Below, one piece after another: positions 28,292-53,278 of a stretch of DNA of 64,000 nt. Position numbers and translations under genes: made by a program. The stretch spans positions 124,001 to 188,000 of the IMG/VR virus record IMGVR_UViG_3300047095_000752. One strand, written 5' to 3'. Numbering within the stretch: position 1 is the first letter of the stretch; each line of letters starts with the position of its first letter. The notes under the pieces are model-generated. The model ran no database searches. It saw only the letters and a program-made list of their open reading frames with translations, and was not told the DNA's origin.

Positions 28292-28678
28292 CTACGATTT
28301 GGCTTTGTAGTACTTTATACCAAGTTTGTCTAGCTCCGATTTTAACAATTGAATTCGCTCTTCGGAACTACTACAACAATCATTCTTTGTAATTGTATTT
28401 GAAACTCGGGTTGAATTCCAACCATATACTTTTCGCATTATACTAAGTGTGGTCATCTTTTGCTTTGAATTTTTATTTTCACACAGATTATATGTTATAC
28501 CATCGTCACCCTTTGGTTCCGAGTTTCTCAATATTGACTTTGATATTCCAGCTTTATTTATTAAAAACCCAACTAGACATTGACAGTCATCTTTATCGCA
28601 GAAGCTGCCTTTTATAAGCTTATCAGGTAACTGAACACGGGACGGCTTCTTGAGTGTGGGGGCTTTGACTGTTTTCAT
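28292..28678 (-). CDS. Hypothetical protein
   Basis: AAGGA RBS; CQCLVG motif. Confidence 0.55.
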   Translation of the reverse strand: MKTVKAPTLKKPSRVQLPDKLIKGSFCDKDDCQCLVGFLINKAGISKSILRNSEPKGDDGITYNLCENKNSKQKMTTLSIMRKVYGWNSTRVSNTITKNDCCSSSEERIQLLKSELDKLGIKYYKAKS

Positions 28679-29624
28679 TTTCGTATTCCTTTAGTCTAAG
28701 GTTAAACCAAGTGAGAAATTCATCTTGGTTGTATTTGGCTCTCTTGTCTGAGTTCTCGGTTCTTGTGATTATTCTTAAGTTTTCTCTTAAGTTGCAAATG
28801 GATTTGATTATGGCTTTATCATATTTTATGTCAAAATCGTTATCAACGAAAGCCGCTCGCGGAAATATATGATCCACTTCGTAAATATTTCTGAGATCGT
28901 GACGATGCTTTCTATTGTGTTTTGCTAGATATTTATTATTTAAAAAATCATTGTAGTTTGGATCATCTGATAGAATGTGAATTTGACTGTGGTGAAATGA
29001 TAAAAATTTTCGGCGAATATCTCTGGTCCGATCTATATTCCATCTCGTGTGGTTTTCACCTGATATACTTTTATAAAAACATTCTCTACATTTATAACCA
29101 TATTGAAAATCCCCAAATGTACGTTCAGATTTATGACCAGCCGGGCATTTCATTTCAAGTTTTGTATTAGCGTTTTTATATTCAGTGCTTAATAGAATAT
29201 AACCTGTAGATTCGATTGTTGATTTAACGTGTTCATATGAATGTTTTACTAAACCTGCGCATATCTTACATCTATTATTGTTATCTTTAAAACTATTAAA
29301 TATAACATCGTATGTATGATCTTTTGGGCATTTAACTGTTAATTTACTACAATTATTTTCATACACTCCCGATATATATTTATAACCTTTTGACTCTATA
29401 TAATTTATAACATCGTTTATATCTAATTTTCGTTTATTTAAACTGCATTGTTTACATCTACGTCCCGCTTTAAAATTGTTGTATATGGAGTAAAATATAT
29501 GATCATCGGGACATTTAATCTTTAGTTTATCACTATTTTTGGTATATGTTTTACTTAGTAGTTTATACCCGCTTTCTTTTTCAATTTCATTTTTAACATA
29601 TTCGTATTCTAATTTCTTAGGCAT
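28623..29624 (-). CDS. Zinc-finger-repeat HNH homing endonuclease (3 repeats)
   Basis: Three CPxxH..RCxxC repeats; DHIFPR...ICNLRENLRI. Confidence 0.8.
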   Translation of the reverse strand: MPKKLEYEYVKNEIEKESGYKLLSKTYTKNSDKLKIKCPDDHIFYSIYNNFKAGRRCKQCSLNKRKLDINDVINYIESKGYKYISGVYENNCSKLTVKCPKDHTYDVIFNSFKDNNNRCKICAGLVKHSYEHVKSTIESTGYILLSTEYKNANTKLEMKCPAGHKSERTFGDFQYGYKCRECFYKSISGENHTRWNIDRTRDIRRKFLSFHHSQIHILSDDPNYNDFLNNKYLAKHNRKHRHDLRNIYEVDHIFPRAAFVDNDFDIKYDKAIIKSICNLRENLRIITRTENSDKRAKYNQDEFLTWFNLRLKEYENENSQSPHTQEAVPCSVT

Positions 29625-31967
29625 TTATATCACTCCGTTGTCACTCAGATAATCTCCGATCAAGATGAACATACTGTCAGTATCGCCGTATGCAACATAT
29701 GGTAGATCGGAATTCTCAAAGTGTTCGATGTAGGATGTTTTAATAGTTGAATCATCCGTCTGTAAATAATTTGAAAGATGATATACGGAAAATTTAAGGG
29801 CTTCTTGACCTGTGCTGGTGATCGCTTTCGCCATATCTAGATTGTACATACGGAAAAATGGCAACCCCAGGATCCCATAAATGCTATTGCTGACAATTTT
29901 ATAACTGCTCTGTTTATTATCAAATTGCTTTAATTCTACCTTCATCCGCTCCTTAGTCACAGGATCCAGATCCGTATTTGTATTAATTTCTTGTCTAAGA
30001 TCGCCTAATTTCTTTTTATAAAGATCGCGCTGATCGCCCAAGTGAGTTAACACTTCGTGGAAGAATGATAGCTCAACTTCATGTTGAACAAAAAGGCATC
30101 CATTAATCGTTATAATATAATCATTCTTTACTATGAATTCTTCAAACTCAGCCGGAGTTAAATATATATCTTCGCTGGATCTAAGGATCGGATTAAGTGT
30201 AACCTTAATTTGATCCGGTAGTTGTGATTTTTTATATAGATATGAATATGCGTCTTTTTCTGACACTTTACCTTTGTATGTATTAGGTCCTATATTCATA
30301 GATTGAATTATTGATGGATACAGTGATTTAAAGTCAAAATCGACAACCCACTGGTGAACACCTACCTTTGGTTCCAGTACATATGCCCCTGAGAATGTCG
30401 CGTGATTTTGTTTTATTGAATTTCTGCATACTAAATTCTTATCCTTAGCGAACTTCAATAGAATTGGATCAACAAGACCAGATGTGGTCTCAGCCCGTCT
30501 CCAAGTACTACTACAAGTCTTTATAAGTTCAAATCGCAAATCTATATGGTGGAGAGCGTCTTCAAGTTCAGATAGCAGTACAGTATCAACCCCAGAATAT
30601 AATATAAACTTAACAAGATCACTTTCGTACATAGTATTAATGGTACCTTCAAAAGCGACTTTACCTTCACCCAGTACCTTCTGTGATATATTATTTAATT
30701 TATAACTTTCTTCTACATTTTGCGTAAGTTTTTTATATATTGCTAATTGGTCTACCATATATAGACCATATACTGTCGTCCCATAATATTCACTTATGTC
30801 AACATCAGCAAGTCCGATTGGAGACAATGAATCTACATCCAATCCCAATTTATGCATGCGATTTACTGTATAGGGCACATCGAATAGCTCTGAATTCCAC
30901 CCCGCCCAAACATCAGGATCGAGTTCTTTTGCTTTTTCTATAAATGCCGTTATAAGATCAGCTTCTGAGTCAAAAATCTTTATAATATATTCATTAATCT
31001 CTGGGAACACGCTTAAATTATCATATAAGCTCTTATGCCCTTTATTGTATGATGTTGTGTCCATTTCAGGTAGTTGTAGAATATAGACGTGTGTAGCCCC
31101 ATCACTGTCCAGTTTAAAAGATATCGAGTTAATCGGGAACTCAGCTTCAAGAGCGAATGGAAATGCTTTATGTTGTCCGGTATACACTTCAATATCCCAG
31201 TATAGTATCTTTAATTTATACTGGCATTCCGGTTCAGTTCTATTGTAATAATAGTCAATAGAATGTTTAATATCCGGTTTAACATCTTCTTCGTACATCG
31301 CTGTAGTTGGGAGAAGTCCAACTTTGGTTGTATGTAACTGTACGTCGGATACCTTCTTTATTATATCACTGTCTCTAATGTCCATAGGTACTGAATAGAA
31401 ATAAGTATCTTTTGAATTTACTGTGTGGTATTTTTTAGTTCCATTTGCATCTCTAAACACATATAGAATCTTACTTTTAAACTTATTGTATTGTATGTCA
31501 ATTAATATGTGATTTGAATCGTAACACCAATCGGGTAGTTTAAACGAGTGACATTTTGCTTCTTCATTTGTAACGACTGTGTTTATACTCTTTTCTCTAT
31601 TTTTAAAGTATAATTTAGATATGGTAGTAAATTGCTCTTCTACGAACGAATAGAAAAAGTCCAATTCACTACATACCTCGTCTAGATCATAAGTGATCAT
31701 CAACTTTATATCTTTATATTTAATACCTTTACCTACAACAGACTCAAACTTATCACCCAACTCGTCGTTAAACGTTTTCGTCACACCCTCCCCCATAATT
31801 ACAGTGAGTGTAGCATCTGTAGCTTTGATGTGATCTTCGGTTAGCTTACTTGTTGGATATATTTTATGATCTATCTTATCGAAGTTGTTAGTCTTCAAGA
31901 TCTTTTTGAATAACTTATTTTTTATAGTTTCTTGATTTGCATAAATTGCAATTGGAATTGAAGCCAC
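29625..31967 (-). CDS. Family B DNA polymerase, N-terminal subunit (UDG-like domain, 3'-5' exonuclease, palm motifs A-C)
   Basis: WDIEV (ExoI), GWNSELFD (ExoII), YSGVD (ExoIII), DFKSLYPS (A), KIVSNSIYG (B), YGDTDS (C); stop 15 aa after DTDS. Confidence 0.92.
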   Translation of the reverse strand: MASIPIAIYANQETIKNKLFKKILKTNNFDKIDHKIYPTSKLTEDHIKATDATLTVIMGEGVTKTFNDELGDKFESVVGKGIKYKDIKLMITYDLDEVCSELDFFYSFVEEQFTTISKLYFKNREKSINTVVTNEEAKCHSFKLPDWCYDSNHILIDIQYNKFKSKILYVFRDANGTKKYHTVNSKDTYFYSVPMDIRDSDIIKKVSDVQLHTTKVGLLPTTAMYEEDVKPDIKHSIDYYYNRTEPECQYKLKILYWDIEVYTGQHKAFPFALEAEFPINSISFKLDSDGATHVYILQLPEMDTTSYNKGHKSLYDNLSVFPEINEYIIKIFDSEADLITAFIEKAKELDPDVWAGWNSELFDVPYTVNRMHKLGLDVDSLSPIGLADVDISEYYGTTVYGLYMVDQLAIYKKLTQNVEESYKLNNISQKVLGEGKVAFEGTINTMYESDLVKFILYSGVDTVLLSELEDALHHIDLRFELIKTCSSTWRRAETTSGLVDPILLKFAKDKNLVCRNSIKQNHATFSGAYVLEPKVGVHQWVVDFDFKSLYPSIIQSMNIGPNTYKGKVSEKDAYSYLYKKSQLPDQIKVTLNPILRSSEDIYLTPAEFEEFIVKNDYIITINGCLFVQHEVELSFFHEVLTHLGDQRDLYKKKLGDLRQEINTNTDLDPVTKERMKVELKQFDNKQSSYKIVSNSIYGILGLPFFRMYNLDMAKAITSTGQEALKFSVYHLSNYLQTDDSTIKTSYIEHFENSDLPYVAYGDTDSMFILIGDYLSDNGVI

Positions 31968-31984: not shown

Positions 31985-33113
31985 TTATCTTTTAAATGCA
32001 GTTCTACGAATCAATCGAGTTGTATTTTTTCTGCTTACAAAATCATTTTCTGGAATCATATGATATAAATCTAAAAGAGACATACTCGCAAATTTACTAA
32101 ATAAAACTTTAAACATAGAATTTAAAATATAATCAAATCCATCGAGTCTTTCATAGGGTCTCTTTATGAATTTTGTTTTTTTATTATCATTTTTACAAAT
32201 AATAAATACGAATGAGAAAAAGTCAACTAATACACTATGTATAGCATCATGAATTAATAATGTAGTATAATATTCTATGTTTAGGTGATATCTAAATTTA
32301 GGCATAATTAAATACATGGGGTTGTAATAGTTTTCTTTTTTGTTCACTTTATAACCCTTACATTTTCATGATAGCGGTTGAATAGTTCTGAGTTACTACA
32401 GTAGTTGTGGTTATAATTTATTGTGAAGGATCTTCGGAAATTAGATCTGATCCCTAAGTCTAAAATTTTAACCGTGAACTTGAATTTCAGTCTGTTGAAA
32501 TCCAGATGTACGGTATAATAATCATTTCCTAATATTATAGCTATAAGTTTGGATAATTTTTTAACTTCTATTTGTTCCAACATATATGATATATAATATA
32601 TATTACTCCCGATATATCGAATTGATATTGGTGGTATAACTATTACACCGTGTGCCATAAATGCTCGTACTGATAATGGGTATATGACATTTGCTTAAAT
32701 TCAGTTCTTCTAAATTTATTTGAAGTTTTATCTTGTACAAGTATAGAACCATAAAACCAACATATCGCACGTAGATTGGCTGCGATTGGATAATGTATAT
32801 ATAAGGATAACTGAGTCAGGCATCCATAATATATATGCTTATCACTTTCGTTTCGGATACCATTTATTTTAAGTGTATTTTCGTTTTTCTTTCTGCGATA
32901 TCTTGGGATTATTATATTTGCATTCTTTCTTAGTGTAACCGACAACAATCCTTGAATGACACACATGGTCCTACCAAGTCCTTGTTGAAGTGTTTTTATT
33001 TTACCTTTATTCCCATATGAGATATCTTGATGTTGGTCGTGGATTTTATAATGATCTATATTTGGAAAGAATAAAAATAAAAATGGACTTTTACTTCTCT
33101 TTCTTATACTCAT
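31985..33113 (-). CDS. Three small hypothetical ORFs (31985-32347, 32344-32658, 32643-33113)
   Basis: Coupled ORFs between the two polymerase genes. Confidence 0.45.
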
Positions 33114-33445
33114 AGCAGTTTTATAAAGTTGGGGTTATTTTTTATTAGGGCGAGTAACGAATGTGATAATACTTCGATCATTTGCTCATAGAAGGAGTCG
33201 TCATCCTCGTCTAGGTTTAGACCGGCTTGAATCAGTATAGCGTGAAGGATCTCGTGTAAAATTGTAACTTCCATTTTACCTTTAGCTAAGGAACGTTTTA
33301 TAACGAGTTTTAAATTCTCATTATCTGTGTACGCAGAATAGTCGCCATCCGGGGTCATTTTTGGCTCATCTTCAAATACAATCTGATAGGTTAATGGTGA
33401 TATATATATTTCTTTTAGATCTGTTATTTTTTTGGCATCGGACAC
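33110..33445 (-). CDS. HExxH zinc metallopeptidase-like protein (ImmA/IrrE-like)
   Basis: TILHEILHAI ... EQMIE. Confidence 0.65.
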   Translation of the reverse strand: MSDAKKITDLKEIYISPLTYQIVFEDEPKMTPDGDYSAYTDNENLKLVIKRSLAKGKMEVTILHEILHAILIQAGLNLDEDDDSFYEQMIEVLSHSLLALIKNNPNFIKLL

Positions 33446-34404
33446 TGTGTTGACCTCTCGGTTGTATCGGTTGTATTATATTCATTTATCTTTTCATTAA
33501 ACCAAGCCATAAATTCTTCTTGGTTGTATTTACCACCTTTAGTGTTGTTATCTTTTTCGTGTATTATTCTTAAGTTTTCTCGTAGGTTGCAGATCTCTTT
33601 TATTATAGCCGGATCGTATATATTATCTAAGTTGTTATCAATAAATGCTATTCTCGGTTGAATGTGATCTACCGTATAATCAGATCTGTCCCATATATTA
33701 CTTGATGTCTTGGCGAGTTTTTGAGATTGGACGTGATTGTTGTAATTCGGATCATCATTTAATATATGTATTTTTTTATAATCAAACGATAAATATTTAG
33801 TTCTAGTTTGTCGGGTCCGGTCAGTCATCCAACGAACGTTATTTTCACCAGACTTATTTTCATAGGAACATTCCCTACACCTAACATCATTATTTTTAAA
33901 ATTATCAAAGATCATTTCTATTTTATGATTTTTAGGGCACAGTAGTTCGTCTTTATTTTTACAGCCTTTATATTCGGAAATTAACGTATAGCCATGATCT
34001 TTATAATAATTAAATACAAAATCATGACTATATTGCATTTTTATCTTATGACATTCTATACATCTACGTCGAGTCCTAAAATGGCTAAAACTCATTTCTA
34101 TTTTATGACCTTTCGGACATATCAATTCATCTTTTGTCATACACCCTTTATATTTAGAATTTAATGTATACCCACGTTTTTTATAATAATTTTCTACATA
34201 ACTTTCATCAGTTCTTTTATTTATATTTGAACATTCTCTACACTTGTGTCCGTTTTTAAAACTATTGAATAGCATTTCTATTTTATGATTTTTAGGACAT
34301 AATAATGTATTTTTTGTACGGGTATTAACATATTGTGTAAGTAATGTGTATCCACGTTCTGCATAATAATTAAATACGAATTCATGTGTTAATTTGTTTG
34401 GCAT
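33424..34404 (-). CDS. Zinc-finger-repeat HNH homing endonuclease (3 repeats)
   Basis: Three CPKxH repeats; DHIQPR...ICNLRENLRI. Confidence 0.8.
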   Translation of the reverse strand: MPNKLTHEFVFNYYAERGYTLLTQYVNTRTKNTLLCPKNHKIEMLFNSFKNGHKCRECSNINKRTDESYVENYYKKRGYTLNSKYKGCMTKDELICPKGHKIEMSFSHFRTRRRCIECHKIKMQYSHDFVFNYYKDHGYTLISEYKGCKNKDELLCPKNHKIEMIFDNFKNNDVRCRECSYENKSGENNVRWMTDRTRQTRTKYLSFDYKKIHILNDDPNYNNHVQSQKLAKTSSNIWDRSDYTVDHIQPRIAFIDNNLDNIYDPAIIKEICNLRENLRIIHEKDNNTKGGKYNQEEFMAWFNEKINEYNTTDTTERSTQCPMPKK

Positions 34405-34429: not shown

Positions 34430-35206
34430 TTATTGAAATACTTGATCCATAGAATTTATGTTGTTTTGAATAAGAGCAAGAAGTACTTCCTTTACTCTGT
34501 CCGTCCATACGAATCGCAATTGTTCTGCCACGTTACATACATAATAGTCGGGTAACGATTCCTCTTCTGCGGGTAGGACCATATATTTCTGCTTAGATCC
34601 AATTAAATGCATGTTATCCAGAATACGCTGAGGTGCTTTCATTGGGTCGATCCCATTTATCCGGAAAAGATAACCTTTTGTACCGGGCGCAAAAGTTCGA
34701 TACTCTAGCATATTCCATAAGATCATCGCTTGTACCTGATACGGTGGCTTTCCCTTATATTCAGAAAGTGGCTTCGAAAAGTTCACGGATCCAGCAATCA
34801 ACTTAGAATTTTGATTACATAATTGTATAACTTCTTTTTCCGTGTCGACAATAAATTGCTTAATTTCATTTATGTTGATCTTCTCTACTTTCAAGATCAT
34901 ATCTAAGAGAGCTTGTACCTTTTCTTTGGTGTAAACCGGAAAGTTAGAGCGACGAATCACAAGTCCTTTTAGGTCGAATTCGGATACAGTTTTACCTTCT
35001 TTATTTTTTATAAAAAGACCATATTTCTTTTTTGTAAAGAATACCGCATTACTTGCCAATACTTCTTGTTTCAATTTTAGAGCATTATATTTGGGATTGG
35101 CTCGGTGCATCCTTATGAATTCGGGTAGTAGATCTTTATTTAAAATGTCTTCTAGCTTATGACACTCTTTTAAAACAATCTGTATAAGTTCTTCTTCGGT
35201 TTTCAT
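34430..35206 (-). CDS. Family B DNA polymerase, C-terminal subunit (rest of palm + thumb)
   Basis: LKQEV...FFTKKKYGL...KGLVIRRS (KKrY and KGxxxxRS motifs). Confidence 0.88.
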   Translation of the reverse strand: MKTEEELIQIVLKECHKLEDILNKDLLPEFIRMHRANPKYNALKLKQEVLASNAVFFTKKKYGLFIKNKEGKTVSEFDLKGLVIRRSNFPVYTKEKVQALLDMILKVEKININEIKQFIVDTEKEVIQLCNQNSKLIAGSVNFSKPLSEYKGKPPYQVQAMILWNMLEYRTFAPGTKGYLFRINGIDPMKAPQRILDNMHLIGSKQKYMVLPAEEESLPDYYVCNVAEQLRFVWTDRVKEVLLALIQNNINSMDQVFQ

Positions 35207-37137: not shown

Positions 37138-38490
37138 TTAATTTGTTGTTTTGTCAACCTTTTTAATCTGTTCTTCGAATGTATTGACTACGGATTCGGG
37201 ACTTATATGCTGTGTGCAACCGGGTAGTAAATTACTAACTCGGAATGGACATCTATGTTCCTTACTATTCAAATAACAGGGGTAAAAGCCACACTCATTG
37301 TTCCATGTATCGTCTGGATTCAGCCCCTGTACGGTTTCGTATCCACCAACCACATTGTATGCTGGGTAGGGTCCACAAATCGTCACAGCGGGCTTCCCGA
37401 GCGCCCCGGAAATATGGGCAAAGGAAGAGTCAATCGTAATCCCACCAACGCACGCGGAATAGATTGCAATTGCTTTTGTGATTGTATCGGACACGGCAGC
37501 AAGATTGAGTATATTATCACGATTTTCGATAAATGACTTATTTGACAACTGTGGGCTTAATATTGCGTTTGTACCTTTATTTTTAATATCAATATAATTT
37601 AAAGTATTAACGATAAAATTATTAACTTCAGGTTGCCTCTTAATATTATCAATAATACCAACCTTATATCCCCGCCCAATCAGAAGGCGACAAATCTCAG
37701 CCCATTTTTCATCTGGGTAGGCACGTAGATTTGATGTCGATGTCATATGTAGCAACACTGTATTATTTGGAATCAGTAACTTCATAGATTTCATTAAAAT
37801 GTGATTTGGAATTAATTTTGAAATGTAATCTTTTGAATCATATGTGAATTTACAAACGTCTCGATAAACATCATAATAATTCTGCTTCTGAGCAGCTTCA
37901 CAATTTTCAATGGCACCAATAAATGTAAGGTGATAATCATGAGCCATCATAAGCTTGGCGTCTAGAGGGAAGGGTACGACATTGTCAACGATACCCGGAG
38001 GGAAGTTGCTAAACAGTTCCATAAAGGCTGGCTTCGTAGAATATGTAATTTTACAGGAAGGCCATCGGTCTTTAATATGCTTGAGTACACTCTGGGATAC
38101 AATCAAGTCACCCAACCCACCCATACGCATTACAAGTAGAGATTTGTTGGTTAGGTCTTGACCCATATATCGGTTACATATATCTTCGAACTTAAGCTTA
38201 GATGGTTTTAAACATTTCTTTGTATCACCCTTTGTCTTATATCCATCCATAAAAATTGAAAGTGGGAGAACGTAATTATTTCCCGACTTCATTTGATATA
38301 CGTCGTCGAATGTAAAATCGCGAGTCACTCTTGCGATTGTCATTGCCGTGGGTGCTTCAAGAAGTTCTTGTATATTTTTAAACTTACGATCCGTCACATA
38401 ATTTTCAAGTCCAAATTTCTTAACCACATCTTTTGTTAACTTGAATTTCTTATGTGCATCTTTATATGAATTTAGATTTTTCTTCGCCAT
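37138..38490 (-). CDS. Glycosyltransferase family 9 (heptosyltransferase-like); likely start MAKK at 38490
   Basis: RMGGLGDLI; ITIDSSFAHISGALGKPAVTICGP; C-terminal CxPC...C...C. Confidence 0.85.
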   Translation of the reverse strand: MAKKNLNSYKDAHKKFKLTKDVVKKFGLENYVTDRKFKNIQELLEAPTAMTIARVTRDFTFDDVYQMKSGNNYVLPLSIFMDGYKTKGDTKKCLKPSKLKFEDICNRYMGQDLTNKSLLVMRMGGLGDLIVSQSVLKHIKDRWPSCKITYSTKPAFMELFSNFPPGIVDNVVPFPLDAKLMMAHDYHLTFIGAIENCEAAQKQNYYDVYRDVCKFTYDSKDYISKLIPNHILMKSMKLLIPNNTVLLHMTSTSNLRAYPDEKWAEICRLLIGRGYKVGIIDNIKRQPEVNNFIVNTLNYIDIKNKGTNAILSPQLSNKSFIENRDNILNLAAVSDTITKAIAIYSACVGGITIDSSFAHISGALGKPAVTICGPYPAYNVVGGYETVQGLNPDDTWNNECGFYPCYLNSKEHRCPFRVSNLLPGCTQHISPESVVNTFEEQIKKVDKTTN

Positions 38491-38564
38491 GCCTTTAGTC
38501 CTCTGCGGTGATTGTTTCGGTTTGTGAGTGTATGATATCACACAAAACTTTTTTTTTCAATACC

Positions 38565-39395
38565 GGACAGATTTATGTAAACCACTCGGGGGAGGAACGA
38601 AGAGGGGGGTTAGGGGGGTGATGAAAGGAGGGGGCAAAACTAATTGAAATCGGAAGAATAGGAAATTGTAATTTATGGAACGAAGTGGAATAAATTAGAA
38701 TTTCTGTAGAAAGATCATGAAAATATAAAAACAGAAAGATCAAAAATAAAATTGTAATAAATAGAGAAATATATTGAATATGTGAAACTACTAAAATATA
38801 AAGAAATAGATCTAAGTAAAAATTAAAAGTGAAACTTTAAAATTTACTTGCTAAAAAGTTTAGATCGAAATTAATAAAAAAGATCAAGTAAATGGAATAA
38901 ATTAAAACTTCAATATTATTTTCAAGTGGGAACTCCTTTTTTGGATTTCCCATCTTTTAATTAATATTTCCGAATTTCAATATGAAATAATTTTACAATA
39001 TTGTTTTCAAGCGTAAGCTTTTAAATAATATTGTTTTTTATTTTTAATAAAATTTATTTATTGAGATTTTATTTTAAAGATCAGATATAAGATCAGGAAT
39101 ACTGTTTACGAATATTAATTTAAAATCCAGAGTCATACTCCCATTTCATTCCCGTATGACTCTGGACATATTGAGATATAATATACAATCTTCTTATAAT
39201 ATGTACTATATAATATTATATCTATAACTTTTTTGTAAAATATCTCAATTATCTCAATTTAGTATATAAAGTATTGATATTGAAAGAGTTACAAAACTTG
39301 AGATAAGGTTGAGTAGTTGAGATGTAGCGGAAAAATTCAGGGACTGTAATTTTTCCATAGCTTAAATTATAATAAAACTTGAATTTTGACCTATT
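38565..39395. other. Long non-coding region, candidate replication origin
   Basis: No ORF of 60 aa or more. G-tracts 38588-38634; A-rich strand-biased tract with 7 AGATC; 16-bp direct repeat 38911/38996; 13-bp hairpin 39126-39166; TTGAGAT repeats; IHF consensus 39267-39279. Confidence 0.6.
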
Positions 39396-40930
39396 TAAAT
39401 TACAAGTGGACTCAAATCCGCTTGAGATGATGTGTGGAGGTTAGGATCCAATTTAAACTTTGTGGTGTGTCCGAATTTTGAGAAAGAAACAGTCCACCCA
39501 TTCATTTCCAGTACATCAGTGTTTTCTTTTAATCTTCTGGCGAATACTCTTGGTTTTAATTTATTTGAATATGCTGTATTGGACTCCAATATTTTGATAA
39601 TTTCAGTCGGAGTACCTTCAATATAATTATATCCAATTTTATTAAAATCAAATTCTATAATCGATTGTATCAGTGGATCTAGATCCGTAAGGTTTTGCAG
39701 TTGAGAATTTACAATTGTTTTAATTATAGTAGAAATGTTAAATGTAGAATCAGTCGGTATTAAATGTTGAAGTAATTCACCAAATCTTGTAAATCTATAT
39801 TTCTCGGTAAATTTAATATTATTTGTATTCTTTAAAAATGATTGTGCTTCGTAAGCTAATTCCGATAATATATTACTTCTATTATCTAATATAAATTTTA
39901 TTAATAATTCTTCAGGTATTGAATAATCTATTCTATCTTCAAAGAATATTGGGAGGACTCTATCCTTGATATCCTCCCGCTTAGCGAAGTTCGCATTCCT
40001 CGTAGTTATAATCATAGATGATACAATTTGTTTTTTATGAGTTTTAGAATCTGAGAATAAAATTCGCTCACCAAGTTCACCACCAGTTGCAGCCAATGTC
40101 ATTGTGTCTGGAAACCAACTCGGCGGTTTTGAATCTAAGTTATCTATAGCGTAAACAAAATTCTCAGTTATACAAGCCATCAGACTTCTTTTATTATCTG
40201 GAAAAATTGAAACATTACTTCTCTCGCCCATGAATAATTTTATGATAGCTTTTGAAGTTAATGTCTTACCCGAACTTTTATTTCCGTAAAATAATAAAAT
40301 TGGTAGTGGTTTTATTTTTAATAGAGTACCTACAATCCAAGACTTCAACACATATTTTTGAATCTCTCCGGTGTAGATATAAGTACCATCTGGAATAAGG
40401 ACATTTATATTAAAAGCGTCGGTACATGAATATACAGAATTACAATTAGAAGGTTCCCAATCGGGAAGTGTATAGTCGCCATCAAAATATATATCGCTGT
40501 ATCCATTTTTAACTTTAATTAGATTATCATGTTCGTCGAAAGTCACTATATGTTTATCGCCACAACTTACATATAATTTATTATTAAAGATACAAGTGAA
40601 TTTATGTAAAGTTATAATTCGGTCACTTAGTAGTATCTTGTCTTTTATATAATTGAATAATTCTTTTGAAAATTTGTTTTGAAAAAAATCAACTCCGAAG
40701 GTTACATTAAACAGAGATTGAATTTCCTGATATGATGCGTCGAACTGGACGACTTCCCCGGATGGTAGGTGTATATATGGCACATACTTTTCTTTTTCGT
40801 TTATAACTTTAAATACATGATTACCTTCATATAGTATGTTAAATATAGTTTCTTTTATTTTTATTAGAGCCTTTGGATTTTTCTTTCTTTTATTTAGAAA
40901 CGAAAAAATCAACTTTTGAATTGAGTCCAT
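39395..40930 (-). CDS. P-loop replication ATPase / helicase-like protein with C-terminal wHTH
   Basis: Walker A GNKSSGKT; YAIDNLD; ATGG..xERILFSD; ITT; DIKDR. Confidence 0.7.
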   Translation of the reverse strand: MDSIQKLIFSFLNKRKKNPKALIKIKETIFNILYEGNHVFKVINEKEKYVPYIHLPSGEVVQFDASYQEIQSLFNVTFGVDFFQNKFSKELFNYIKDKILLSDRIITLHKFTCIFNNKLYVSCGDKHIVTFDEHDNLIKVKNGYSDIYFDGDYTLPDWEPSNCNSVYSCTDAFNINVLIPDGTYIYTGEIQKYVLKSWIVGTLLKIKPLPILLFYGNKSSGKTLTSKAIIKLFMGERSNVSIFPDNKRSLMACITENFVYAIDNLDSKPPSWFPDTMTLAATGGELGERILFSDSKTHKKQIVSSMIITTRNANFAKREDIKDRVLPIFFEDRIDYSIPEELLIKFILDNRSNILSELAYEAQSFLKNTNNIKFTEKYRFTRFGELLQHLIPTDSTFNISTIIKTIVNSQLQNLTDLDPLIQSIIEFDFNKIGYNYIEGTPTEIIKILESNTAYSNKLKPRVFARRLKENTDVLEMNGWTVSFSKFGHTTKFKLDPNLHTSSQADLSPLVI

Positions 40931-40953
40931 AAAAGGTTTCCTTGTTTGAAAAT

Positions 40954-40977
40954 GCCGCCCGGTAAGTTCCGGGCGGC
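40954..40977 (-). terminator. GC-rich hairpin (terminator or attenuator) upstream of the ATPase gene
   Basis: GCCGCCCGG-N6-CCGGGCGGC. Confidence 0.55.
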
Positions 40978-40991
40978 GATTAATTCGTTTA

Positions 40992-41087
40992 TCAGTCGTC
41001 TGTGTAGTCGTCTCCTATGGAACGAGCTACTGTTATAAGGAGGACCACAAAAATGAAAAACGCAAATAAAACATTAACCAATTCCAT
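40992..41087 (-). CDS. 31-aa single-pass membrane peptide (not in the ORF track)
   Basis: MELVNVLFAFFIFVVLLITVARSIGDDYTDD*; GGAG RBS. Confidence 0.55.
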   Translation of the reverse strand: MELVNVLFAFFIFVVLLITVARSIGDDYTDD

Positions 41088-41141
41088 TACTTCACTCCCG
41101 AGTTAAAGTTTAGATTCAATAATTAATATATATAATCGGGT

Positions 41142-41170
41142 TTGACTTTAGACCAAAAGGGTGGTATCAT
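41142..41170 (+). promoter_or_regulatory. Sigma70-like promoter
   Basis: TTGACT-N17-TATCAT with TGG. Confidence 0.55.
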
Positions 41171-41200
41171 TTAGATACAAACCACAACGGAGTTTCTTTT

Positions 41201-43147
41201 ATGAAAATCGAACAAGAGTTCAATTGGTATTCCAACACGGTATATGAATATTTCGATAATGTTCAAAATTCAAAACTATCATTTCATCTAGAATCTGGAT
41301 TATCTAAAAATGACACTGGAATGATGAATTATACAAATACAAGACTATCCGTTAAAATTAAAGATAATCAGATTAATCAAAAGGTTGAGTTTGAGCTTAG
41401 CTTTGATGACGTATACATATTAAATACAATTATAGGGTCCATATCCAAAACCCCCGGTAAACCACCAATTCCAATTAATTCATACACGAAAAATAAACAA
41501 AGACAATTAGTCGTGTATGAACCGTCTCCCGGCTTATTTAATTTAAGCATAACAGATAATAGTACAATCGCTAAGACATTGGTAGTCGCTTTTAAAAAGG
41601 TGACCCTTGCGGCTATGAATGATGTAATCTCCCAGTTAAAATCCAATTGGCTTATACTGTCATCAAATGCACAATCAATTGTAACTACCCATAGCGTCCT
41701 TAATCATCTAGAAGCTATTGATAAACATATAACAGAATCTAATGTAATTGCTTTACATAATACAAATAACGTAAAACAACCTACAGCCATCCGCCGTGTA
41801 GATCCGGTTACATCGGTGGTTGCCCCTCCTGTAGTACATATAGATAATGAATTTGAACCAGACCTTGAAATGGAGACTTCCGAATATGAAGACATAGACT
41901 CAACTCCCGTATTTGATATCGATACCAGTGGGGCGAGTGAAGCTGAAACTGATCCACCGGTCGGGTTTGTACTTGATGATAATGTCCTTAGTTCAGTGTC
42001 CCTGACCGCTGCTGGGGAGTCTGGTACAACAGACTACACTAAACGACCAAAGCAAGTCATAACCCCTCGTCCGTTTATCAATAATTTTATCGAATGGAAT
42101 TTGGATAATATTTATCAATGGGTTACCGGATTTGTATATTGTGATCAGAATTCAGATCAACTGACATTAACGCCACTGGACCTTATATTAACTAAATCTA
42201 TTGGAAAACATAAATATGAATTTTTAACTAACAATCCCCATCATTATGAATTTGAATATCACATTTTAGATGTCATTAAAAAGGCTATGAAGTCTTATGT
42301 GGAAACTGGTAAGACTAAGACAACCGTAAATTATTATGTAGATACTAATACAATTGATAAAAATAATGATATAGATTTATGGAATTTCACGGTAGATCTA
42401 ACAGTATTAATTAATGTCTTCAAAATATTCTTGATAAATGTAAATCAACTTAATCTTAAGTCTGAAGAAAGTCTTGAAAAGACATTCAATGTAAAGATGG
42501 CATATATATTCTTAGACACCATCGCATGTACATTTTTATCAAAAATAAACCATGAAGATACAGAACAATTTACGTCAGACTCAATTAATGTATTCCAGCA
42601 GATGTCAGATCGTGGTTCGTTTGATTCTATATTGAATACATACTCAGCATTATCAATGGGTGGAAAACTCCAACTGAACATAAGCATGTTCAAGGCTTGC
42701 GCGGACAAATTCTTAGAAATACAGTCTAATAAAGACAAAGTATGTATAGACACTTTAAATATTGGTATAAATGGTATAGAACATATACGTGAAAAATTAG
42801 AGACAGTTATACAAAAGCCGAAGAAAGTAAAATCACCTCAAGTTAAATTATTCTGTAAGTATTTGAAAAATAATGACTTAGACGACTCTAACTATAAAGA
42901 TTGCTACGAATTATTAGAATTCGACATGACGGAAGAAACCAACACTGATATTATAAAGGTATACGGTATTCTACGTATGAACCCAAATATAACTAAAATG
43001 ATCCAGTTAGAAAATCACATTGATTCTAAAGAACAAGTAGAAGAAACCCCCACAGTTCCTGAACCAACTCAAAAGTCTGAGCATGAAGTATTCGATATCT
43101 GGGATATTGACGACTCCGACGAATCCCTTTTCAACTTGGAAGATTAA
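41201..43147 (+). CDS. Hypothetical protein with acidic linker and acidic C-terminus
   Basis: 648-aa ORF. Confidence 0.7.
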   Translation: MKIEQEFNWYSNTVYEYFDNVQNSKLSFHLESGLSKNDTGMMNYTNTRLSVKIKDNQINQKVEFELSFDDVYILNTIIGSISKTPGKPPIPINSYTKNKQRQLVVYEPSPGLFNLSITDNSTIAKTLVVAFKKVTLAAMNDVISQLKSNWLILSSNAQSIVTTHSVLNHLEAIDKHITESNVIALHNTNNVKQPTAIRRVDPVTSVVAPPVVHIDNEFEPDLEMETSEYEDIDSTPVFDIDTSGASEAETDPPVGFVLDDNVLSSVSLTAAGESGTTDYTKRPKQVITPRPFINNFIEWNLDNIYQWVTGFVYCDQNSDQLTLTPLDLILTKSIGKHKYEFLTNNPHHYEFEYHILDVIKKAMKSYVETGKTKTTVNYYVDTNTIDKNNDIDLWNFTVDLTVLINVFKIFLINVNQLNLKSEESLEKTFNVKMAYIFLDTIACTFLSKINHEDTEQFTSDSINVFQQMSDRGSFDSILNTYSALSMGGKLQLNISMFKACADKFLEIQSNKDKVCIDTLNIGINGIEHIREKLETVIQKPKKVKSPQVKLFCKYLKNNDLDDSNYKDCYELLEFDMTEETNTDIIKVYGILRMNPNITKMIQLENHIDSKEQVEETPTVPEPTQKSEHEVFDIWDIDDSDESLFNLED

Positions 43148-45097: not shown

Positions 45098-46087
45098 ATG
45101 CCTGACCTTATTCGGGATAAAATGTGGGTCGAGAAATATCGACCACGCGACCTGAAGGACTTAATCCTTCCGGATAATATGAAATCATTTTTTGAAAATT
45201 GTATAGCAAATAAATCGATACCAAATTTAATATTACATGGTCGCCCCGGAACGGGTAAGACTACATTAGCTCAAATATTAATTGATAATATAGTTGGTAC
45301 ATCCAGCGAAGACAGAGAATATAATTTACTACAATTGAATGGAAGTTTAAATACCGGTGTAGATACTGCCAGAAATCTTATAACCGGATTCATTAAGATT
45401 CCCGCCCTTAATGAATCACAATTGAAAATTATACATATTGACGAGGCAGACTACACATCCAGCGCGTTGCAAGCTGCCTTAAGAAATATAATTGAAGAGA
45501 GTGCATCTTCATGTCGATTTATTTTTACACTAAATTCTAAACATAAGATTATGGAAGCCTTATTTTCTCGTTGCCAATCGTTCGAATTTAAGAAAACCAT
45601 ATCTAAAGAATATATCCTAAAACATATAGCAAATATACTAAAAATTGAAACTGGTCTTGAAAATAAAGATAGTATTATCTCAGAACATATTAAAAGATCA
45701 TACCCAGATATTAGACGAATTATAAACGATGTCCAACAGACTGTTGTAGACAATGTAATATCAGAAGAAATAGTAATACAACATACATTTGAAGATGACA
45801 TTATAAATAATATTAAAGAATTTGGTAAATATGTAAAATTGAATGATAAAGTTGGATTGACATCCAAAATAAAAGAAATTGAAAAACTATTAAATGATAA
45901 TGATATAGATTATATTAATATATACGAAAAATTGTTCGAAGATGAGGGGATAAGCTTCGCATCAAAGATATTAGTAAGCGAACATTGTAATAAACATCAA
46001 GATACATTAGTACCTAATATGAACTTTATAGCAATGCTTTATAAAATAATCGAAACTATGTATAAAAAATTAAAACTGATATCATAA
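45098..46087 (+). CDS. Clamp loader AAA+ subunit (RFC small / T4 gp44-like)
   Basis: WVEKYRP, GRPGTGKTT, IDEAD, QAALR, SRC, PDIRR. Confidence 0.93.
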   Translation: MPDLIRDKMWVEKYRPRDLKDLILPDNMKSFFENCIANKSIPNLILHGRPGTGKTTLAQILIDNIVGTSSEDREYNLLQLNGSLNTGVDTARNLITGFIKIPALNESQLKIIHIDEADYTSSALQAALRNIIEESASSCRFIFTLNSKHKIMEALFSRCQSFEFKKTISKEYILKHIANILKIETGLENKDSIISEHIKRSYPDIRRIINDVQQTVVDNVISEEIVIQHTFEDDIINNIKEFGKYVKLNDKVGLTSKIKEIEKLLNDNDIDYINIYEKLFEDEGISFASKILVSEHCNKHQDTLVPNMNFIAMLYKIIETMYKKLKLIS

Positions 46088-47070
46088 TGAAAGATAAAGA
46101 AATATTACGGCAAGACCTGACTGCAAAGACGGGTCTTGCCTATTTTAACTCTATGGAGTTGATTACATTCTGCCCCCGATGTGAAAAAGATAGATTCCAC
46201 GGCGGACGTAGTCACGGTCACCTGTATATAAGTATAAACGACCCAATATTCAAATGTTTCCGGTGTGACTTTAAAGGCTTTATATATAAGTTATTTAAAG
46301 AACTTCAGTTAGATATAAACAAATATTATGATTTAGATACATTAAAGATCAACTGGTCTAAGACAGACTCAGACCGATTTGTCGATAAAGAGTATAATAC
46401 AGGAGTATTAGTACCGGTAATTAATAAAGATTTCTATACCGATAAGCTGAATTATATAAAGAGCCGAATTCCAAATTACGATGAAGAAATATTATCAAAC
46501 AACATTGTGTTTAATATAAAAGAATTCATAAGCTTAAATAAAATCAATATTGATAAAGAACAATCATTTATAGATTTCTTAGAGTCTAACTTCGTGGGAT
46601 TCCTATCAGCTAGAAAATCTCAGCTTATATGTCGTAATATAGATACAACCTCACAGTTCAGATACTTTAAAATCAAACTGTTAGATATATACTTTAAAGA
46701 TTTTTACGCTAAGCCGCTTGATTTATACAGTAATAAGGTTGTATTATGTGAAGGTGTATTTGATTTACATAACATTATAGCAAATGACAGAACTAAACCT
46801 ATAATCAAGAATTCGGCTATAATAGCGACAGCCTTAAACAATGATTATAAAAATACATTGATATCCGTACTAGATTATGTTAAAATTCCATTTGCAGATG
46901 TTATAATCTTTAGTGACGCCGACTTAAAAGAAGCGGACTATATGCCCATATACTTCAATAATGCTGCAAAGTCTGTTACCCTCTACTACAATTCTTTAAA
47001 TAAGGATTTTGGTACTCACTTAATAGACCCAGTTAAAATACCGATTACAAAATATATAAAAAGGAAATAA
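46087..47070 (+). CDS. DNA primase (T4 gp61-like; zinc finger + TOPRIM)
   Basis: CPRC..HLY..CFRC; LCEGVFD; FSDAD. Confidence 0.8.
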   Translation: MKDKEILRQDLTAKTGLAYFNSMELITFCPRCEKDRFHGGRSHGHLYISINDPIFKCFRCDFKGFIYKLFKELQLDINKYYDLDTLKINWSKTDSDRFVDKEYNTGVLVPVINKDFYTDKLNYIKSRIPNYDEEILSNNIVFNIKEFISLNKINIDKEQSFIDFLESNFVGFLSARKSQLICRNIDTTSQFRYFKIKLLDIYFKDFYAKPLDLYSNKVVLCEGVFDLHNIIANDRTKPIIKNSAIIATALNNDYKNTLISVLDYVKIPFADVIIFSDADLKEADYMPIYFNNAAKSVTLYYNSLNKDFGTHLIDPVKIPITKYIKRK

Positions 47071-48793: not shown

Positions 48794-49798
48794 ATGAGTA
48801 ATACAAGATATAACATACAAACAGCAACCGAAGTGTTTAAACAATATGGTTTAGAATTACTCGAAACTGAATATAAAAATTTAGACGTACGAATGAAGTA
48901 TAAATGCTTAACATGTCATTATGTGGGGGATAAGCCTTTATATGATGTTTTAAGATTTAAATCTGGATGTAAAAGTTGTAATTTAAATAAATTATACGAA
49001 TCAAAGAAATATACCATAGATTTTGCGAGAGACAGTTTTTTAAAAAATGGGTTGATTCTATTAGATGATGTATATATAAATAATCAGACTCCTATGAAAT
49101 TTGAATGTGCAACGTGTTGTAATTCAGGTCAAAATAATTTAGCAAATATATTAAATCAAGGTCAAGGGTGTAAAAAATGTAAAGATGAGGCGTCAGCCTC
49201 CAAAAAACGATTCAATATAGAATATGCTAAAACTGTATATTTAGAAAAAAATTTAGAACTCCTTGAAAATGTTTATATAAATAGTAACACAAAAATGAAA
49301 TATCGGTGTTTGATTTGTAATTATATAGGACAAAATAGTTTAGGTAGTATGGATGATAAAAGCCGTGGGTGTAGAGAATGTCATTATAGAAATATGTGCG
49401 GTAAAAATCATTGGGCGTGGAATCCCAAAAAAACTGAATTGAATGAAATGATTAGAGTAAAAAGATCTAAACATTGGGTTATAAAACATATGACTGATGA
49501 TCCGTTGTATAATGAATGGTTATTAGGGTATGACACTTATGAAATTCACCACACTCCTCAAATTAATGACTGGAGTTCGTATTTAATTGAAAATAACCTA
49601 ACTGATAATAATGAAATTATAATGTATGTAAGAGAGACTGCAAATACTAGAGAAAGACTTAGTATAGTTCCGACTAAAATTCATAAATCCATGCATAAAA
49701 ATAGAAGTTATAAGTTCAATAAAGAAAAATTCGAAAAATTTTTAGAAGAAAATGATATAGGAGTATTAGATTATGCCAATCGAAGTCCCATACAATGA
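48794..49798 (+). CDS. Zinc-finger-repeat HNH-like endonuclease (3 CxxC-type repeats)
   Basis: GLELLE..Y...MKYKC..C...GC..C repeats; KHMxDDP; EIHH...N...L...H. Confidence 0.7.
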   Translation: MSNTRYNIQTATEVFKQYGLELLETEYKNLDVRMKYKCLTCHYVGDKPLYDVLRFKSGCKSCNLNKLYESKKYTIDFARDSFLKNGLILLDDVYINNQTPMKFECATCCNSGQNNLANILNQGQGCKKCKDEASASKKRFNIEYAKTVYLEKNLELLENVYINSNTKMKYRCLICNYIGQNSLGSMDDKSRGCRECHYRNMCGKNHWAWNPKKTELNEMIRVKRSKHWVIKHMTDDPLYNEWLLGYDTYEIHHTPQINDWSSYLIENNLTDNNEIIMYVRETANTRERLSIVPTKIHKSMHKNRSYKFNKEKFEKFLEENDIGVLDYANRSPIQ

Positions 49799-51940: not shown

Positions 51941-51952
51941 GGAGATGGTATA

Positions 51953-52339: not shown

Positions 52340-52343
52340 GTCT

Positions 52344-53267: not shown

Positions 53268-53278
53268 GGAGAAATACC

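What the first reader, a model, noticed from the sequence alone, without database searches (positions are those of the whole stretch)
38900..39430. Iteron-like TTGAGAT repeats arranged symmetrically around an IHF site next to a replication ATPase gene
Seen: TTGAGAT at 39061, 39171, 39298, 39317 and 39422 (variant at 39309), and inverted ATCTCAA at 39242 and 39251. The inverted pair and the 39298-39323 cluster flank a perfect IHF consensus (39267-39279). Also present are a 13-bp stem hairpin (39126-39166), an AAGC-GTAA-GCTT mini-hairpin (~39009) and a 16-bp direct repeat (38911, 38996). The adjacent gene encodes a P-loop ATPase with a wHTH, and the main strand switch is ~2 kb away. Inference: an initiator-plus-origin module of plasmid/lambda style in a phage with an otherwise T4-like replisome.
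Basis: partly seen in the sequence, partly recalled or inferred. Interest (0 to 1): 0.65.

Follow-up and report, generated by a model that had tools for sequence, protein, structure and literature searches.

The report
Helicase-initiator gene with its replication origin
Just downstream of a helicase gene, an uncultured 245-kb lake-water phage carries a conserved array of TTGAGAT sites laid out like the replication origins of staphylococcal pathogenicity islands, which makes it a good but untested candidate origin; the proposed IHF site is no better than chance.

Summary
Seven of the 47 TTGAGAT/ATCTCAA copies in the 245-kb contig lie in 368 bp (window 39061-39428). This is the strongest local 7-mer cluster in the contig. 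Six copies lie in the 904-bp non-coding gap, where shuffles give 0.24.

The array is conserved in six further metagenomic lineages whose adjacent protein is only 51-90% identical. The order is: hairpin T1, left set (reverse), a 39-41 bp spacer, a tandem pair (forward), a 53-65 bp stretch of 84-91% A+T, one reverse copy, then hairpin T2. The sequence between the sites is otherwise hardly alignable.

The adjacent 511-aa protein matches no Pfam, PHROG, NCBIfam or PDB sequence. Its model is a D5/SF3-type helicase, closest to the SaPI5 primase-helicase (Z 16.4), with a C-terminal winged-helix-like domain. SaPI Rep proteins bind short iterons placed immediately downstream of rep, in opposite orientation around an A+T-rich centre. 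That is the design seen here.

I read the locus as a self-loading helicase-initiator with its own origin: a new member of a known kind, of SaPI/P4 type rather than lambda type. The IHF match is at chance level. The mini-hairpin and the 16-bp repeat are strain-specific. Binding and origin firing are untested.

The parts
39395..40930 (-). Gene for a 511-aa SF3 (D5/Rep-type) helicase, the proposed initiator (P0001). N-terminal domain 1-170; ATPase core about 200-340 with Walker A 216-223, Walker B 260-266 and motif C 307-312; C-terminal winged-helix-like domain about 437-496 with the invariant basic helix KPRVxxRxxKEN at 459-470.
   Evidence: motifs. (fold: SaPI5 primase-helicase 7om0 Z 16.4; MPXV E5/vaccinia D5 Z about 14; PriRep1 7pds 11.3; Cch 5dgk 10.9). 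(C-terminal domain). No Pfam, PHROG, NCBIfam or PDB sequence hit.
39422..39428 (+). TTGAGAT copy inside the 3' end of the helicase gene. Kept in L001, absent in the more distant relatives.
39329..39356 (-). Hairpin T1 (GGAAAAATT / AATTTTTCC, 10-nt loop), just after the helicase stop codon and before the first site. Every relative has a hairpin here, with stronger GC stems and T runs in L004, L005, L006 and L008.
   Evidence: read from the sequences.
39298..39323 (+). Left set of sites: TTGAGAT at 39298 and 39317, with the variant TTGAGTA at 39309. These read as ATCTCAA in the orientation of the helicase gene.
   Evidence: The set is kept in L003, L004 and L005; one exact copy remains in L001 and L006.
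39258..39297 (.). Spacer 1: 40 bp, 80% A+T. Its length is 39-41 bp in all seven genomes, while its sequence is not conserved. It holds the IHF-consensus match at 39267-39279.
39242..39257 (-). Central tandem pair TTGAGAT-AA-TTGAGAT, read on the - strand. It is the most conserved element of the array. All relatives have it, separated by 1-2 nt; L008 uses TGGAGAT.
39178..39241 (.). Spacer 2: 64 bp, 88% A+T (53-65 bp and 84-91% A+T in the relatives). It is flanked by sites pointing in opposite directions and is the proposed melting region.
39171..39177 (+). Right-hand single site. In this genome and in L001 it also reads as a -35 hexamer, with TATAAT 18 bp downstream on the + strand.
39126..39166 (-). 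Hairpin T2: 13-14 bp stem, 15-nt loop GGGAATGAAATGGGA, followed by a T run on the - strand. It bounds the array.
   Evidence: 6 pairs changed on both sides between this genome and L003, no break in the 13 core pairs, loop 14/15 conserved. L004, L005 and L008 have unrelated GC hairpins at the same position.
39078..39096 (+). Two AAGATCA heptamers (GATC sites) just beyond T2. They belong to a second repeat family: 5 copies in the gap, the others at about 38712, 38737 and 38881.
   Evidence: Kept in L001 and L003 only.
39061..39067 (+). Distal TTGAGAT copy beyond T2. It abuts the most A+T-rich tract.
   Evidence: Kept in L001; a copy at a similar offset exists in L004.
39019..39078 (.). The most A+T-rich 60-bp stretch of the whole 245-kb contig (95% A+T). 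The gap also holds the top 100-, 200- and 400-bp windows.
   Evidence: The tract is partly made of a strain-specific insertion, and the extreme is not shared by L003-L006.
38897..39034 (.). Most of this segment is absent from the 90%-identical relative L001, so it is not a conserved part of the module.
   Evidence: D1, D4, I4.

Best explanation
The locus is a replication-initiation module: a gene for a self-loading SF3 helicase-initiator, followed directly by that protein's own origin.

Proposed mechanism, all inferred:
1. The C-terminal winged-helix domain of the 511-aa protein reads the heptamer TTGAGAT; an extended site of roughly aaTTGAGATat is suggested by the flanks.
2. The sites form blocks that point in opposite directions: three, two and one copies.
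3. Protein bound on both sides of an A+T-rich spacer therefore assembles as two oppositely oriented rings.
4. The rings melt the 53-65 bp stretch of 84-91% A+T, and/or the 39-41 bp spacer.
5. The helicase then either drives the first forks itself or hands the bubble to the phage's T4-type replisome (DnaB-like helicase, primase-like protein, clamp loader, PolB).
6. Hairpins T1 and T2 bound the array and probably insulate it from, or tune, transcription coming out of the helicase gene.

Shown here: the enrichment of the sites, their conservation, the fixed spacing, the adjacency to the gene, and the fold of the protein.

Inferred only: binding, melting and origin firing.
For: 1. Clustering. Seven of 47 copies in the contig lie in 368 bp. 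Six lie in the gap against 0.24 expected, and 1 of 2000 shuffles reaches that for any comparable 7-mer. It is the top 7-mer cluster of the contig.

2. Phylogenetic footprint. In L001, L003, L004, L005, L006 and L008, whose proteins are 90, 64, 53, 51, 52 and 52% identical, the same heptamer recurs directly downstream of the homologous gene. Order and orientation are the same. Spacer 1 is always 39-41 bp, while the surrounding DNA is hardly alignable.

3. The protein. It has Walker A, Walker B and SF3 motif C. The Foldseek hits are D5/E5, ASFV PrimPol, NrS-1 and Cch helicases. The best VIA-align hit is the SaPI5 primase-helicase: Z 16.4, 373 residues aligned, model 1-490 against chain 317-750, which includes the C-terminal domain.

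4. The C-terminal domain alone. Its topology is strand-helix-helix-helix-strand-strand, and most of its structural matches are winged-helix DNA binders: CtsR-DNA, RctB, and the winged helices of ORC, MCM8 and Cdt1. The basic helix 459-470 and the wing residues are invariant in all 10 homologues, in step with the invariant DNA heptamer.

5. The known design matches. SaPI Reps bind 5-6 nt iterons through a C-terminal winged helix. There are 6-12 iterons immediately downstream of rep, an A+T-rich centre, and at least 2 iterons on each side pointing in opposite directions (PMC9371898). The pRN1 origin also lies directly downstream of its SF3-helicase replication gene, next to a terminator (PMC4234260).

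6. Context. The gene sits at the junction of two divergent replication operons (clamp loader, primase-like protein, PolB). The gap holds the most A+T-rich DNA of the contig.
Against: There is no experimental evidence of binding or of origin activity.

The protein has no detectable sequence homology to any characterised initiator; the link rests on a predicted fold (mean pLDDT 75).

The C-terminal domain matches are weak (Z at most 5.8, Foldseek E at least 0.06).

Cumulative GC skew gives no clean origin signal; it follows gene orientation.

One relative, L007, has a convergent gene instead of the array within the 467 bp available.

The extreme A+T richness is not shared by all relatives.

The phage already has a DnaB-like helicase, so the SF3 protein could have another DNA job.

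The contig is about 78% complete by CheckV, so other clusters could exist on the missing part.
Confidence: 0.65

Rival explanations
1. The sites are operators or promoter elements. TTGAGAT would be bound by a transcription factor, or used as a -35-like hexamer, to control a short transcript made between hairpins T1 and T2 or an antisense RNA against the 3' end of the helicase gene. No role in replication is implied.
For: TTGAGA is 5/6 of the sigma-70 -35 hexamer. The copy at 39171 has a perfect TATAAT 18 bp downstream, an 11/12 match, and this is kept in L001. Terminator-like hairpins on both sides would frame a small transcription unit. T2 has a conserved loop and a covarying stem.
Against: Only 3 of the 38 sites scored in seven genomes have a -10 partner of at least 5/6 at 16-18 bp. 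The downstream gene has its own conserved promoter several hundred bp away, at 38560-38532. There is no Rfam match. The sequence between the central pair and T2 is poorly conserved apart from the site itself. Opposed blocks with a fixed 39-41 bp spacer are not a usual operator layout. The motif is not spread over other promoters of the contig.
Confidence: 0.15
2. The array is a DNA-packaging recognition site of the cosB/pac type, that is, small-terminase binding sites around a bend site.
For: Repeated short sites in both orientations around an IHF-consensus match recall lambda cosB (my own knowledge, not tested here). GATC heptamers nearby recall P1 pac (my own knowledge).
Against: The array travels with the helicase gene in every lineage that has it, inside the replication gene cluster. 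The IHF match is at chance level and is not conserved. The GATC heptamers are confined to one sub-clade. The contigs laid on the stretch showed no pile-up of molecule ends, but contigs cannot show ends.
Confidence: 0.04
3. The repeats are a chance or compositional product of a long A+T-rich intergenic spacer and have no function.
For: The gap is A+T-rich, and pure A/T 7-mers also reach 6 copies in it.
Against: Shuffles give 0.24 copies of this 7-mer against 6 observed; any 7-mer with at least 2 G/C reaches 6 in only 1 of 2000 shuffles. Number, order, orientation and spacing are retained in lineages whose flanking protein is only about 51-64% identical.
Confidence: 0.02

Closest known systems
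SaPI Rep / PriRep self-loading helicase-initiators and their ori (Staphylococcus aureus pathogenicity islands; PDB 7om0, 7ola, 7pds; PMC9371898)
   Same: It is the best structural match of the whole protein: Z 16.4 over 373 residues, C-terminal domain included. Both have an SF3-type ATPase and a C-terminal winged helix. In both, short repeats lie immediately downstream of the gene, in blocks of opposite orientation around A+T-rich DNA, 6-8 copies here against 6-12 there.
   Different: There is no detectable sequence similarity. There is no primase domain and no adjacent pri gene; a primase-like ORF lies about 5 kb away in the divergent operon. The repeat is a heptamer rather than a penta- or hexamer, laid out as three, two and one copies with a rigid 39-41 bp spacer. 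The module sits in a jumbo phage of at least 245 kb with its own PolB, clamp loader and DnaB-like helicase, not in a 15-kb satellite. The array is framed by two hairpins.
Phage P4 alpha protein with ori/crr (my own knowledge; not tested here)
   Same: An SF3 helicase with a C-terminal winged-helix origin-binding domain that reads short repeated sites in the phage's own origin.
   Different: P4 alpha carries a primase domain. Its ori and crr are two separated clusters of octamer repeats.
pRN1 ORF904 replication protein and its downstream origin (PMC4234260)
   Same: The replication protein contains an SF3 helicase and a winged helix. The origin lies within 166 bp directly downstream of the gene, next to a putative terminator, and a stem-loop is essential.
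   Different: The pRN1 origin is defined by a 100-nt stem-loop, not by an iteron array. ORF904 has a prim-pol domain. It is an archaeal plasmid.
Origins of eukaryotic-virus SF3 initiators: papillomavirus E1, SV40 large T antigen, AAV Rep (origin layouts from my own knowledge)
   Same: The ATPase core matches E1 and AAV Rep at Z 9-10. In those origins, short sites arranged as inverted blocks direct the assembly of two opposed hexamers beside A+T-rich DNA.
   Different: Those initiators bind the origin through an N-terminal HUH-like origin-binding domain, not a C-terminal winged helix. The site sequences and spacing are unrelated.
   Same: Repeated initiator sites next to A+T-rich DNA and close to the initiator gene.
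   Different: Those initiators are not helicases. Their sites are 17-22 bp direct repeats. The lambda origin lies inside the O gene and needs a separate helicase loader. None of this fits the protein found here.

Membership tests
SaPI-type Rep-ori module (self-loading SF3 helicase-initiator plus downstream iteron origin) | SF3/AAA+ ATPase core with Walker A, Walker B and motif C | tested here: met
   GNKSSGKT 216-223, YAIDNLD 260-266, IITTRN 307-312. The fold matches D5/E5, PrimPol, NrS-1, Cch, E1 and Rep helicases.
SaPI-type Rep-ori module (self-loading SF3 helicase-initiator plus downstream iteron origin) | C-terminal winged-helix DNA-binding domain | tested here: inconclusive
   The topology is strand-helix-helix-helix-strand-strand. 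The whole-protein alignment to SaPI5 runs through residue 490. The domain alone matches mostly winged-helix proteins, but weakly (Z at most 5.8, E at least 0.06).
SaPI-type Rep-ori module (self-loading SF3 helicase-initiator plus downstream iteron origin) | Multiple short iterons immediately downstream of the rep reading frame | tested here: met
   Six exact copies plus one variant lie within 334 bp after the stop codon, and one more lies in the last 33 bp of the gene. The same holds in 6 relatives.
SaPI-type Rep-ori module (self-loading SF3 helicase-initiator plus downstream iteron origin) | At least two iterons on each side of an A+T-rich region, pointing in opposite directions | tested here: met
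   Left set (2 exact copies plus 1 variant) against the central pair, across a 40-bp spacer of 80% A+T. Central pair against one copy, across 64 bp of 88% A+T. Strictly, only the first spacer has 2 or more copies on both sides.
SaPI-type Rep-ori module (self-loading SF3 helicase-initiator plus downstream iteron origin) | Sequence homology to a characterised Rep family | tested here: not met
   No Pfam, PHROG, NCBIfam or PDB sequence hit for the protein or for a profile of 10 homologues. No tblastn hit in 50,697 phage records.
SaPI-type Rep-ori module (self-loading SF3 helicase-initiator plus downstream iteron origin) | Specific, ATP-independent binding of Rep to its own iterons, and melting of the origin | not testable with these tools
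   This needs EMSA or footprinting and a melting assay.
SaPI-type Rep-ori module (self-loading SF3 helicase-initiator plus downstream iteron origin) | The fragment supports Rep-dependent replication | not testable with these tools
   This needs a replication assay or marker-frequency data. Only assembled contigs of lake metagenomes were available.
   The window holds 12 matches against 10.3 expected. The site has one mismatch in L003, lies on the other strand in L005, and is absent in L004 and L006. The contig has no HU/IHF-family gene.
T4-type R-loop origin (promoter plus unwinding element) | A conserved promoter firing into an A+T-rich unwinding element | tested here: inconclusive
   One strong sigma-70-like site (39171-39200, + strand) occurs in this genome and in L001 only; there is no consistent -10 in the other lineages.

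The most novel reading that the evidence does not exclude
The array is the primary origin of a lineage of freshwater jumbo phages that encode their own multisubunit RNA polymerase. A primase-less, SaPI-like self-loading SF3 helicase recognises and melts it, then hands over to a T4-type replisome (DnaB-like helicase, PolB, clamp loader). As far as I know, no phage has been shown to use such a hybrid initiation scheme. The covarying hairpin T2, with its conserved 15-nt loop, would be part of the origin as a loading or priming signal, as the stem-loop is in pRN1, rather than a mere terminator.
Probability: 0.25. Interest if true: 0.6.

Novelty: new member of a known kind. Interest (0 to 1): 0.45.

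Why it matters
As far as I know, origins of replication are essentially unmapped in jumbo phages, and in uncultured phages generally. This locus gives a precise hypothesis that can be tested with synthetic parts, without a host:
- a defined 7-bp site;
- a defined array of about 170 bp (window 39171-39323, plus hairpins);
- a defined protein domain (residues about 425-500).

It also adds a protein family that sequence searches do not link to any known family, but whose predicted fold is that of the self-loading SF3 helicase-initiators. And it shows the layout of gene, then opposed short repeats around A+T-rich DNA, in a large lytic-type phage genome, not only in small satellites and plasmids. 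The rigid 39-41 bp spacer is a geometric constraint that structural work on double-hexamer assembly could use.

Tried and rejected
1. IHF site: the consensus is at chance frequency and is not conserved. Rejected as a feature.

2. TTGAGAT as a family of -35 hexamers: only 3 of 38 sites have a plausible -10. Rejected as the general explanation.

3. Known RNA families, tRNAs and consensus terminators in 38300-39700: none found. Small ORFs in the gap do not keep their frame in L003.

4. GC skew as an origin signal: the cumulative skew follows gene orientation, with its minimum at contig position 207 kb. Uninformative.

5. Relatives in annotated phages (blastn and tblastn) and in IMG/VR or JGI metagenomes by protein: none.

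6. DNA-pattern scans for the central pair (8 viral contigs) and for site, spacer and pair together (50 metagenome contigs). All hits are unrelated: coding regions of one well-sampled gene, tandem repeats, or other intergenic repeats. None has a relative of the helicase.

7. Sequencing runs: only DNA runs from lake-water metagenomes, stored as contigs, and no RNA. Laying four of them on 38300-39700 gave short, low-depth pieces identical to the window and no usable variation, ends or depth.

8. Second mini-cluster: 3 copies in 52 bp at contig positions 53577-53628. It lies inside the RNA polymerase beta-like gene and is treated as probable chance (rough p about 0.002). I could not check it in relatives.

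9. Complement of the T2 loop elsewhere in the contig, as an antisense target: no convincing match.

10. An early note that GATC is 2.7-fold enriched genome-wide was a double count of a palindrome. The true figure is 1063 copies, observed/expected 1.14.

11. The fold search had already placed the protein, and no claim here rests on the absence of distant relatives.
Full report
**What the window is**

The window is positions 124001-188000 of a single 245,225-bp virus contig with 34.8% G+C. IMG/VR classes it as linear, and CheckV puts it at about 78% complete. The same sequence occurs in many lake-water metagenomes.

The contig encodes these replication and transcription functions:
- a family-B DNA polymerase only about 28% identical to those of T4-like phages, split into two genes (29625-31967 and 34430-35206);
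- a gp44-like clamp-loader ATPase (45098-46087);
- a weakly primase-like ORF (46087-47070);
- a DnaB-like helicase (contig 233320-234132);
- a multisubunit RNA polymerase beta-like subunit (contig 51497-54286).

Most other proteins that I scanned have no Pfam family.

**The observation**

TTGAGAT or its complement occurs 12 times in the window and 47 times in the contig; 7 of these lie in 39061-39428. The feature sits in a gap between two genes on the - strand:
- Upstream is the helicase gene, 39395-40930.
- Downstream is a GT9/heptosyltransferase-like gene. Its real start is probably the ATG at 38490. It is preceded by AGAGGA and by a conserved TTGAAA-17-TATCAT promoter.

Within this 904-bp gap (74% A+T) the heptamer occurs 6 times. 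Dinucleotide shuffles give 0.24 copies. Any 7-mer with at least two G/C reached 6 copies in only 1 of 2000 shuffles. A de novo scan ranks this locus first in the contig for local 7-mer repetition.

The IHF consensus match at 39267-39279 is real, but the window has 12 such matches against 10.3 expected.

**Comparative evidence**

The word search found nine homologues of the adjacent protein, 51-90% identical and all from metagenomes. Eight loci could be fetched. Gene order is conserved in the longer loci, and a long non-coding gap follows the helicase gene in most.

In seven genomes (this one plus L001, L003, L004, L005, L006 and L008) the same heptamer recurs just after the stop codon. Read in the orientation of the helicase gene, the order is:
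1. a hairpin, T1;
2. a left set of ATCTCAA copies, with a CTCAA variant between them;
3. a spacer of 39-41 bp whose length, but not sequence, is kept;
4. a tandem pair, TTGAGAT-a(a)-TTGAGAT, followed by ATTTT;
5. 53-65 bp of 84-91% A+T;
6. a single ATCTCAA (not found in L006);
7. a second hairpin, T2.

L008 uses TGGAGAT in the pair. Outside these elements the DNA of the more distant relatives barely aligns, so the heptamers stand out as a phylogenetic footprint. L007 has a convergent gene in place of the array within the 467 bp available.

**The hairpins**

T2 (39126-39166) shows six base pairs changed on both sides between this genome and L003. None of the 13 core pairs is broken, and the loop is 14/15 conserved. 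L004, L005 and L008 have unrelated GC-rich hairpins with T runs at the same position.

This pattern fits a terminator-like boundary element. The conserved 15-nt loop in one sub-clade remains unexplained; no complementary target was found in the contig.

**Features that are not conserved**

The gap holds the most A+T-rich 60-, 100-, 200- and 400-bp windows of the contig. This extreme is partly due to that insertion and is not shared by L003-L006.

A second repeat, AAGATCA (a GATC site), occurs five times in the gap. All copies are in one orientation. It is kept only in the sub-clade of this genome, L001 and L003.

**The protein**

No Pfam, PHROG, NCBIfam or PDB sequence match was found, either for the single protein or for a profile of ten homologues.

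The sequence has Walker A, Walker B and the SF3 motif C. An AlphaFold model (pLDDT 75) matches D5/E5, ASFV PrimPol, NrS-1 and SCCmec Cch helicases by Foldseek. In the VIA-align second look, the best match is the SaPI5 primase-helicase: Z 16.4, 373 residues, model 1-490 on chain 317-750. There is no primase domain.

The last 70 or so residues have winged-helix topology. Folded alone (pLDDT 82), this domain mostly matches winged-helix proteins, but weakly: CtsR-DNA Z 5.8, RctB 5.2, and the winged helices of ORC, MCM8 and Cdt1 at about 4.5. Its basic helix KPRVxxRxxKEN and the wing residues are invariant in all ten homologues. That invariance parallels the invariance of the heptamer.

**Interpretation**

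SaPI Rep proteins are self-loading helicases. Their C-terminal winged helix binds 5-6 nt iterons. Six to twelve iterons lie immediately downstream of rep, around an A+T-rich centre, with at least two iterons on each side pointing in opposite directions (PMC9371898). The pRN1 origin also lies directly downstream of its SF3-helicase gene, next to a terminator (PMC4234260).

The locus here has the same design. I therefore read it as an initiator-helicase gene with its own origin, at confidence 0.65.

It is a functional and structural analogue, not a sequence-level member, of the SaPI Rep families.

The main rival is an operator or promoter array for a small transcript. It is weakened because only 3 of 38 sites have a usable -10 partner, and because the downstream gene has its own distant promoter. 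Packaging-site and chance explanations fit poorly.

**Limits**

Nothing here shows binding, melting or initiation. GC skew is uninformative. No RNA data or raw reads were available. The contig is incomplete. Searches for the module outside this family returned only unrelated sequences.

Noticed in passing
window 29625-31967(-) and 34430-35206(-), with 31985-34404 between them: The family-B DNA polymerase is split into two genes. The exonuclease and N-terminal polymerase part lies downstream, and the C-terminal part lies upstream on the same strand. About 2.5 kb of small ORFs separates them, including an HNH endonuclease (33424-34404, phrog_559). CapR-domain ORFs occur at 33424-34404, 28623-29624 and 48794-49798. 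L003 has an extra HNH/NUMOD4 gene at a different spot. This suggests homing-endonuclease traffic in the replication cluster.
   Followed up: partly
window about 38585-38645 (G runs on +, C runs on -), with GGAACGAAG(A/T)GG at 38594 and 38677: A conserved C-rich tract with 4 runs of C5-6 on the transcribed strand lies just upstream of the TTGAAA-17-TATCAT promoter of the glycosyltransferase-like gene. It is kept in L001 and L003. L004, L005 and L008 keep 2 runs plus the motif AAATTTGTC. A short ORF over it does not keep its frame. Function unknown.
   Followed up: partly
window 38928-38951: A second small hairpin (GGGAACTCC-T6-GGATTTCCC), kept in L001 and L003 with changed stem bases (TGGAATTCC..GGAATTCCA; GGAAATTCC..GGAATTTCC). 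It is terminator-like on either strand.
   Followed up: no
window 38712-39096 (AAGATCA at about 38712, 38737, 38881, 39078, 39090): A second repeat family that contains GATC. There are five copies in the gap against 85 in the whole contig on both strands. All seven GATC sites of the gap read WAGATC on the + strand. On the other strand they read GATCT followed by T-rich DNA, which recalls the oriC 13-mers (my own knowledge). It is kept only in the sub-clade of this genome, L001 and L003. The contig encodes two Dam-like D12 methyltransferases (contig 92188-92949 and 199134-199874).
   Followed up: partly
whole contig (G000): GGCC is strongly avoided: 38 copies against 248 expected from a second-order Markov model (observed/expected 0.15). 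Other 4-bp palindromes are near expectation. This suggests pressure from a GGCC-specific restriction system in the host.
   Followed up: no
G000:C1:51497-54286(-), with TTGAGAT copies at 53577, 53590 and 53622: The contig encodes a multisubunit RNA polymerase beta-like subunit (Rpb2 domains 3 and 6), as jumbo phages with their own RNA polymerases do. This gene holds the only other tight group of TTGAGAT copies (3 in 52 bp), which is probably chance. The contig gave no tubulin match; the gp23 search also found nothing, but its controls were silent.
   Followed up: partly
window 40950-41200: The divergent control region upstream of the helicase gene has a GC-rich hairpin (GCCGCCCGG-N6-CCGGGCGGC, about 40953-40977) only about 20 nt upstream of the helicase start codon. 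It also has a 17-codon ORF with a strong AGGAGG site on the + strand, and a TTGACT-17-TATCAT promoter for the 648-aa gene.
   Followed up: no
window 41201-43147(+): The 648-aa product of the divergent neighbouring gene has no family. Its first 150 or so residues resemble Whirly/PurA-type single-strand DNA-binding folds in the ESM Atlas (feature score 0.77; TM 0.57-0.64 normalised to the hit). This is only a lead that it may be the phage SSB.
   Followed up: partly
window 37138-38490(-): The gene downstream of the array is a GT9 heptosyltransferase-like glycosyltransferase sitting inside the replication cluster. It is syntenic in most relatives. Whether it modifies DNA or a surface sugar is open.
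   Followed up: no
L020, L030, L033, L046, L055, L066 (JGI metagenome contigs): An unrelated intergenic element in other contigs repeats TTGAGATatTTGAGAT...ATCTCAA with a period of about 77 bp. It was found by the pattern scan, has no relative of the helicase nearby, and may be another repeat-based element that uses the same heptamer.
   Followed up: no
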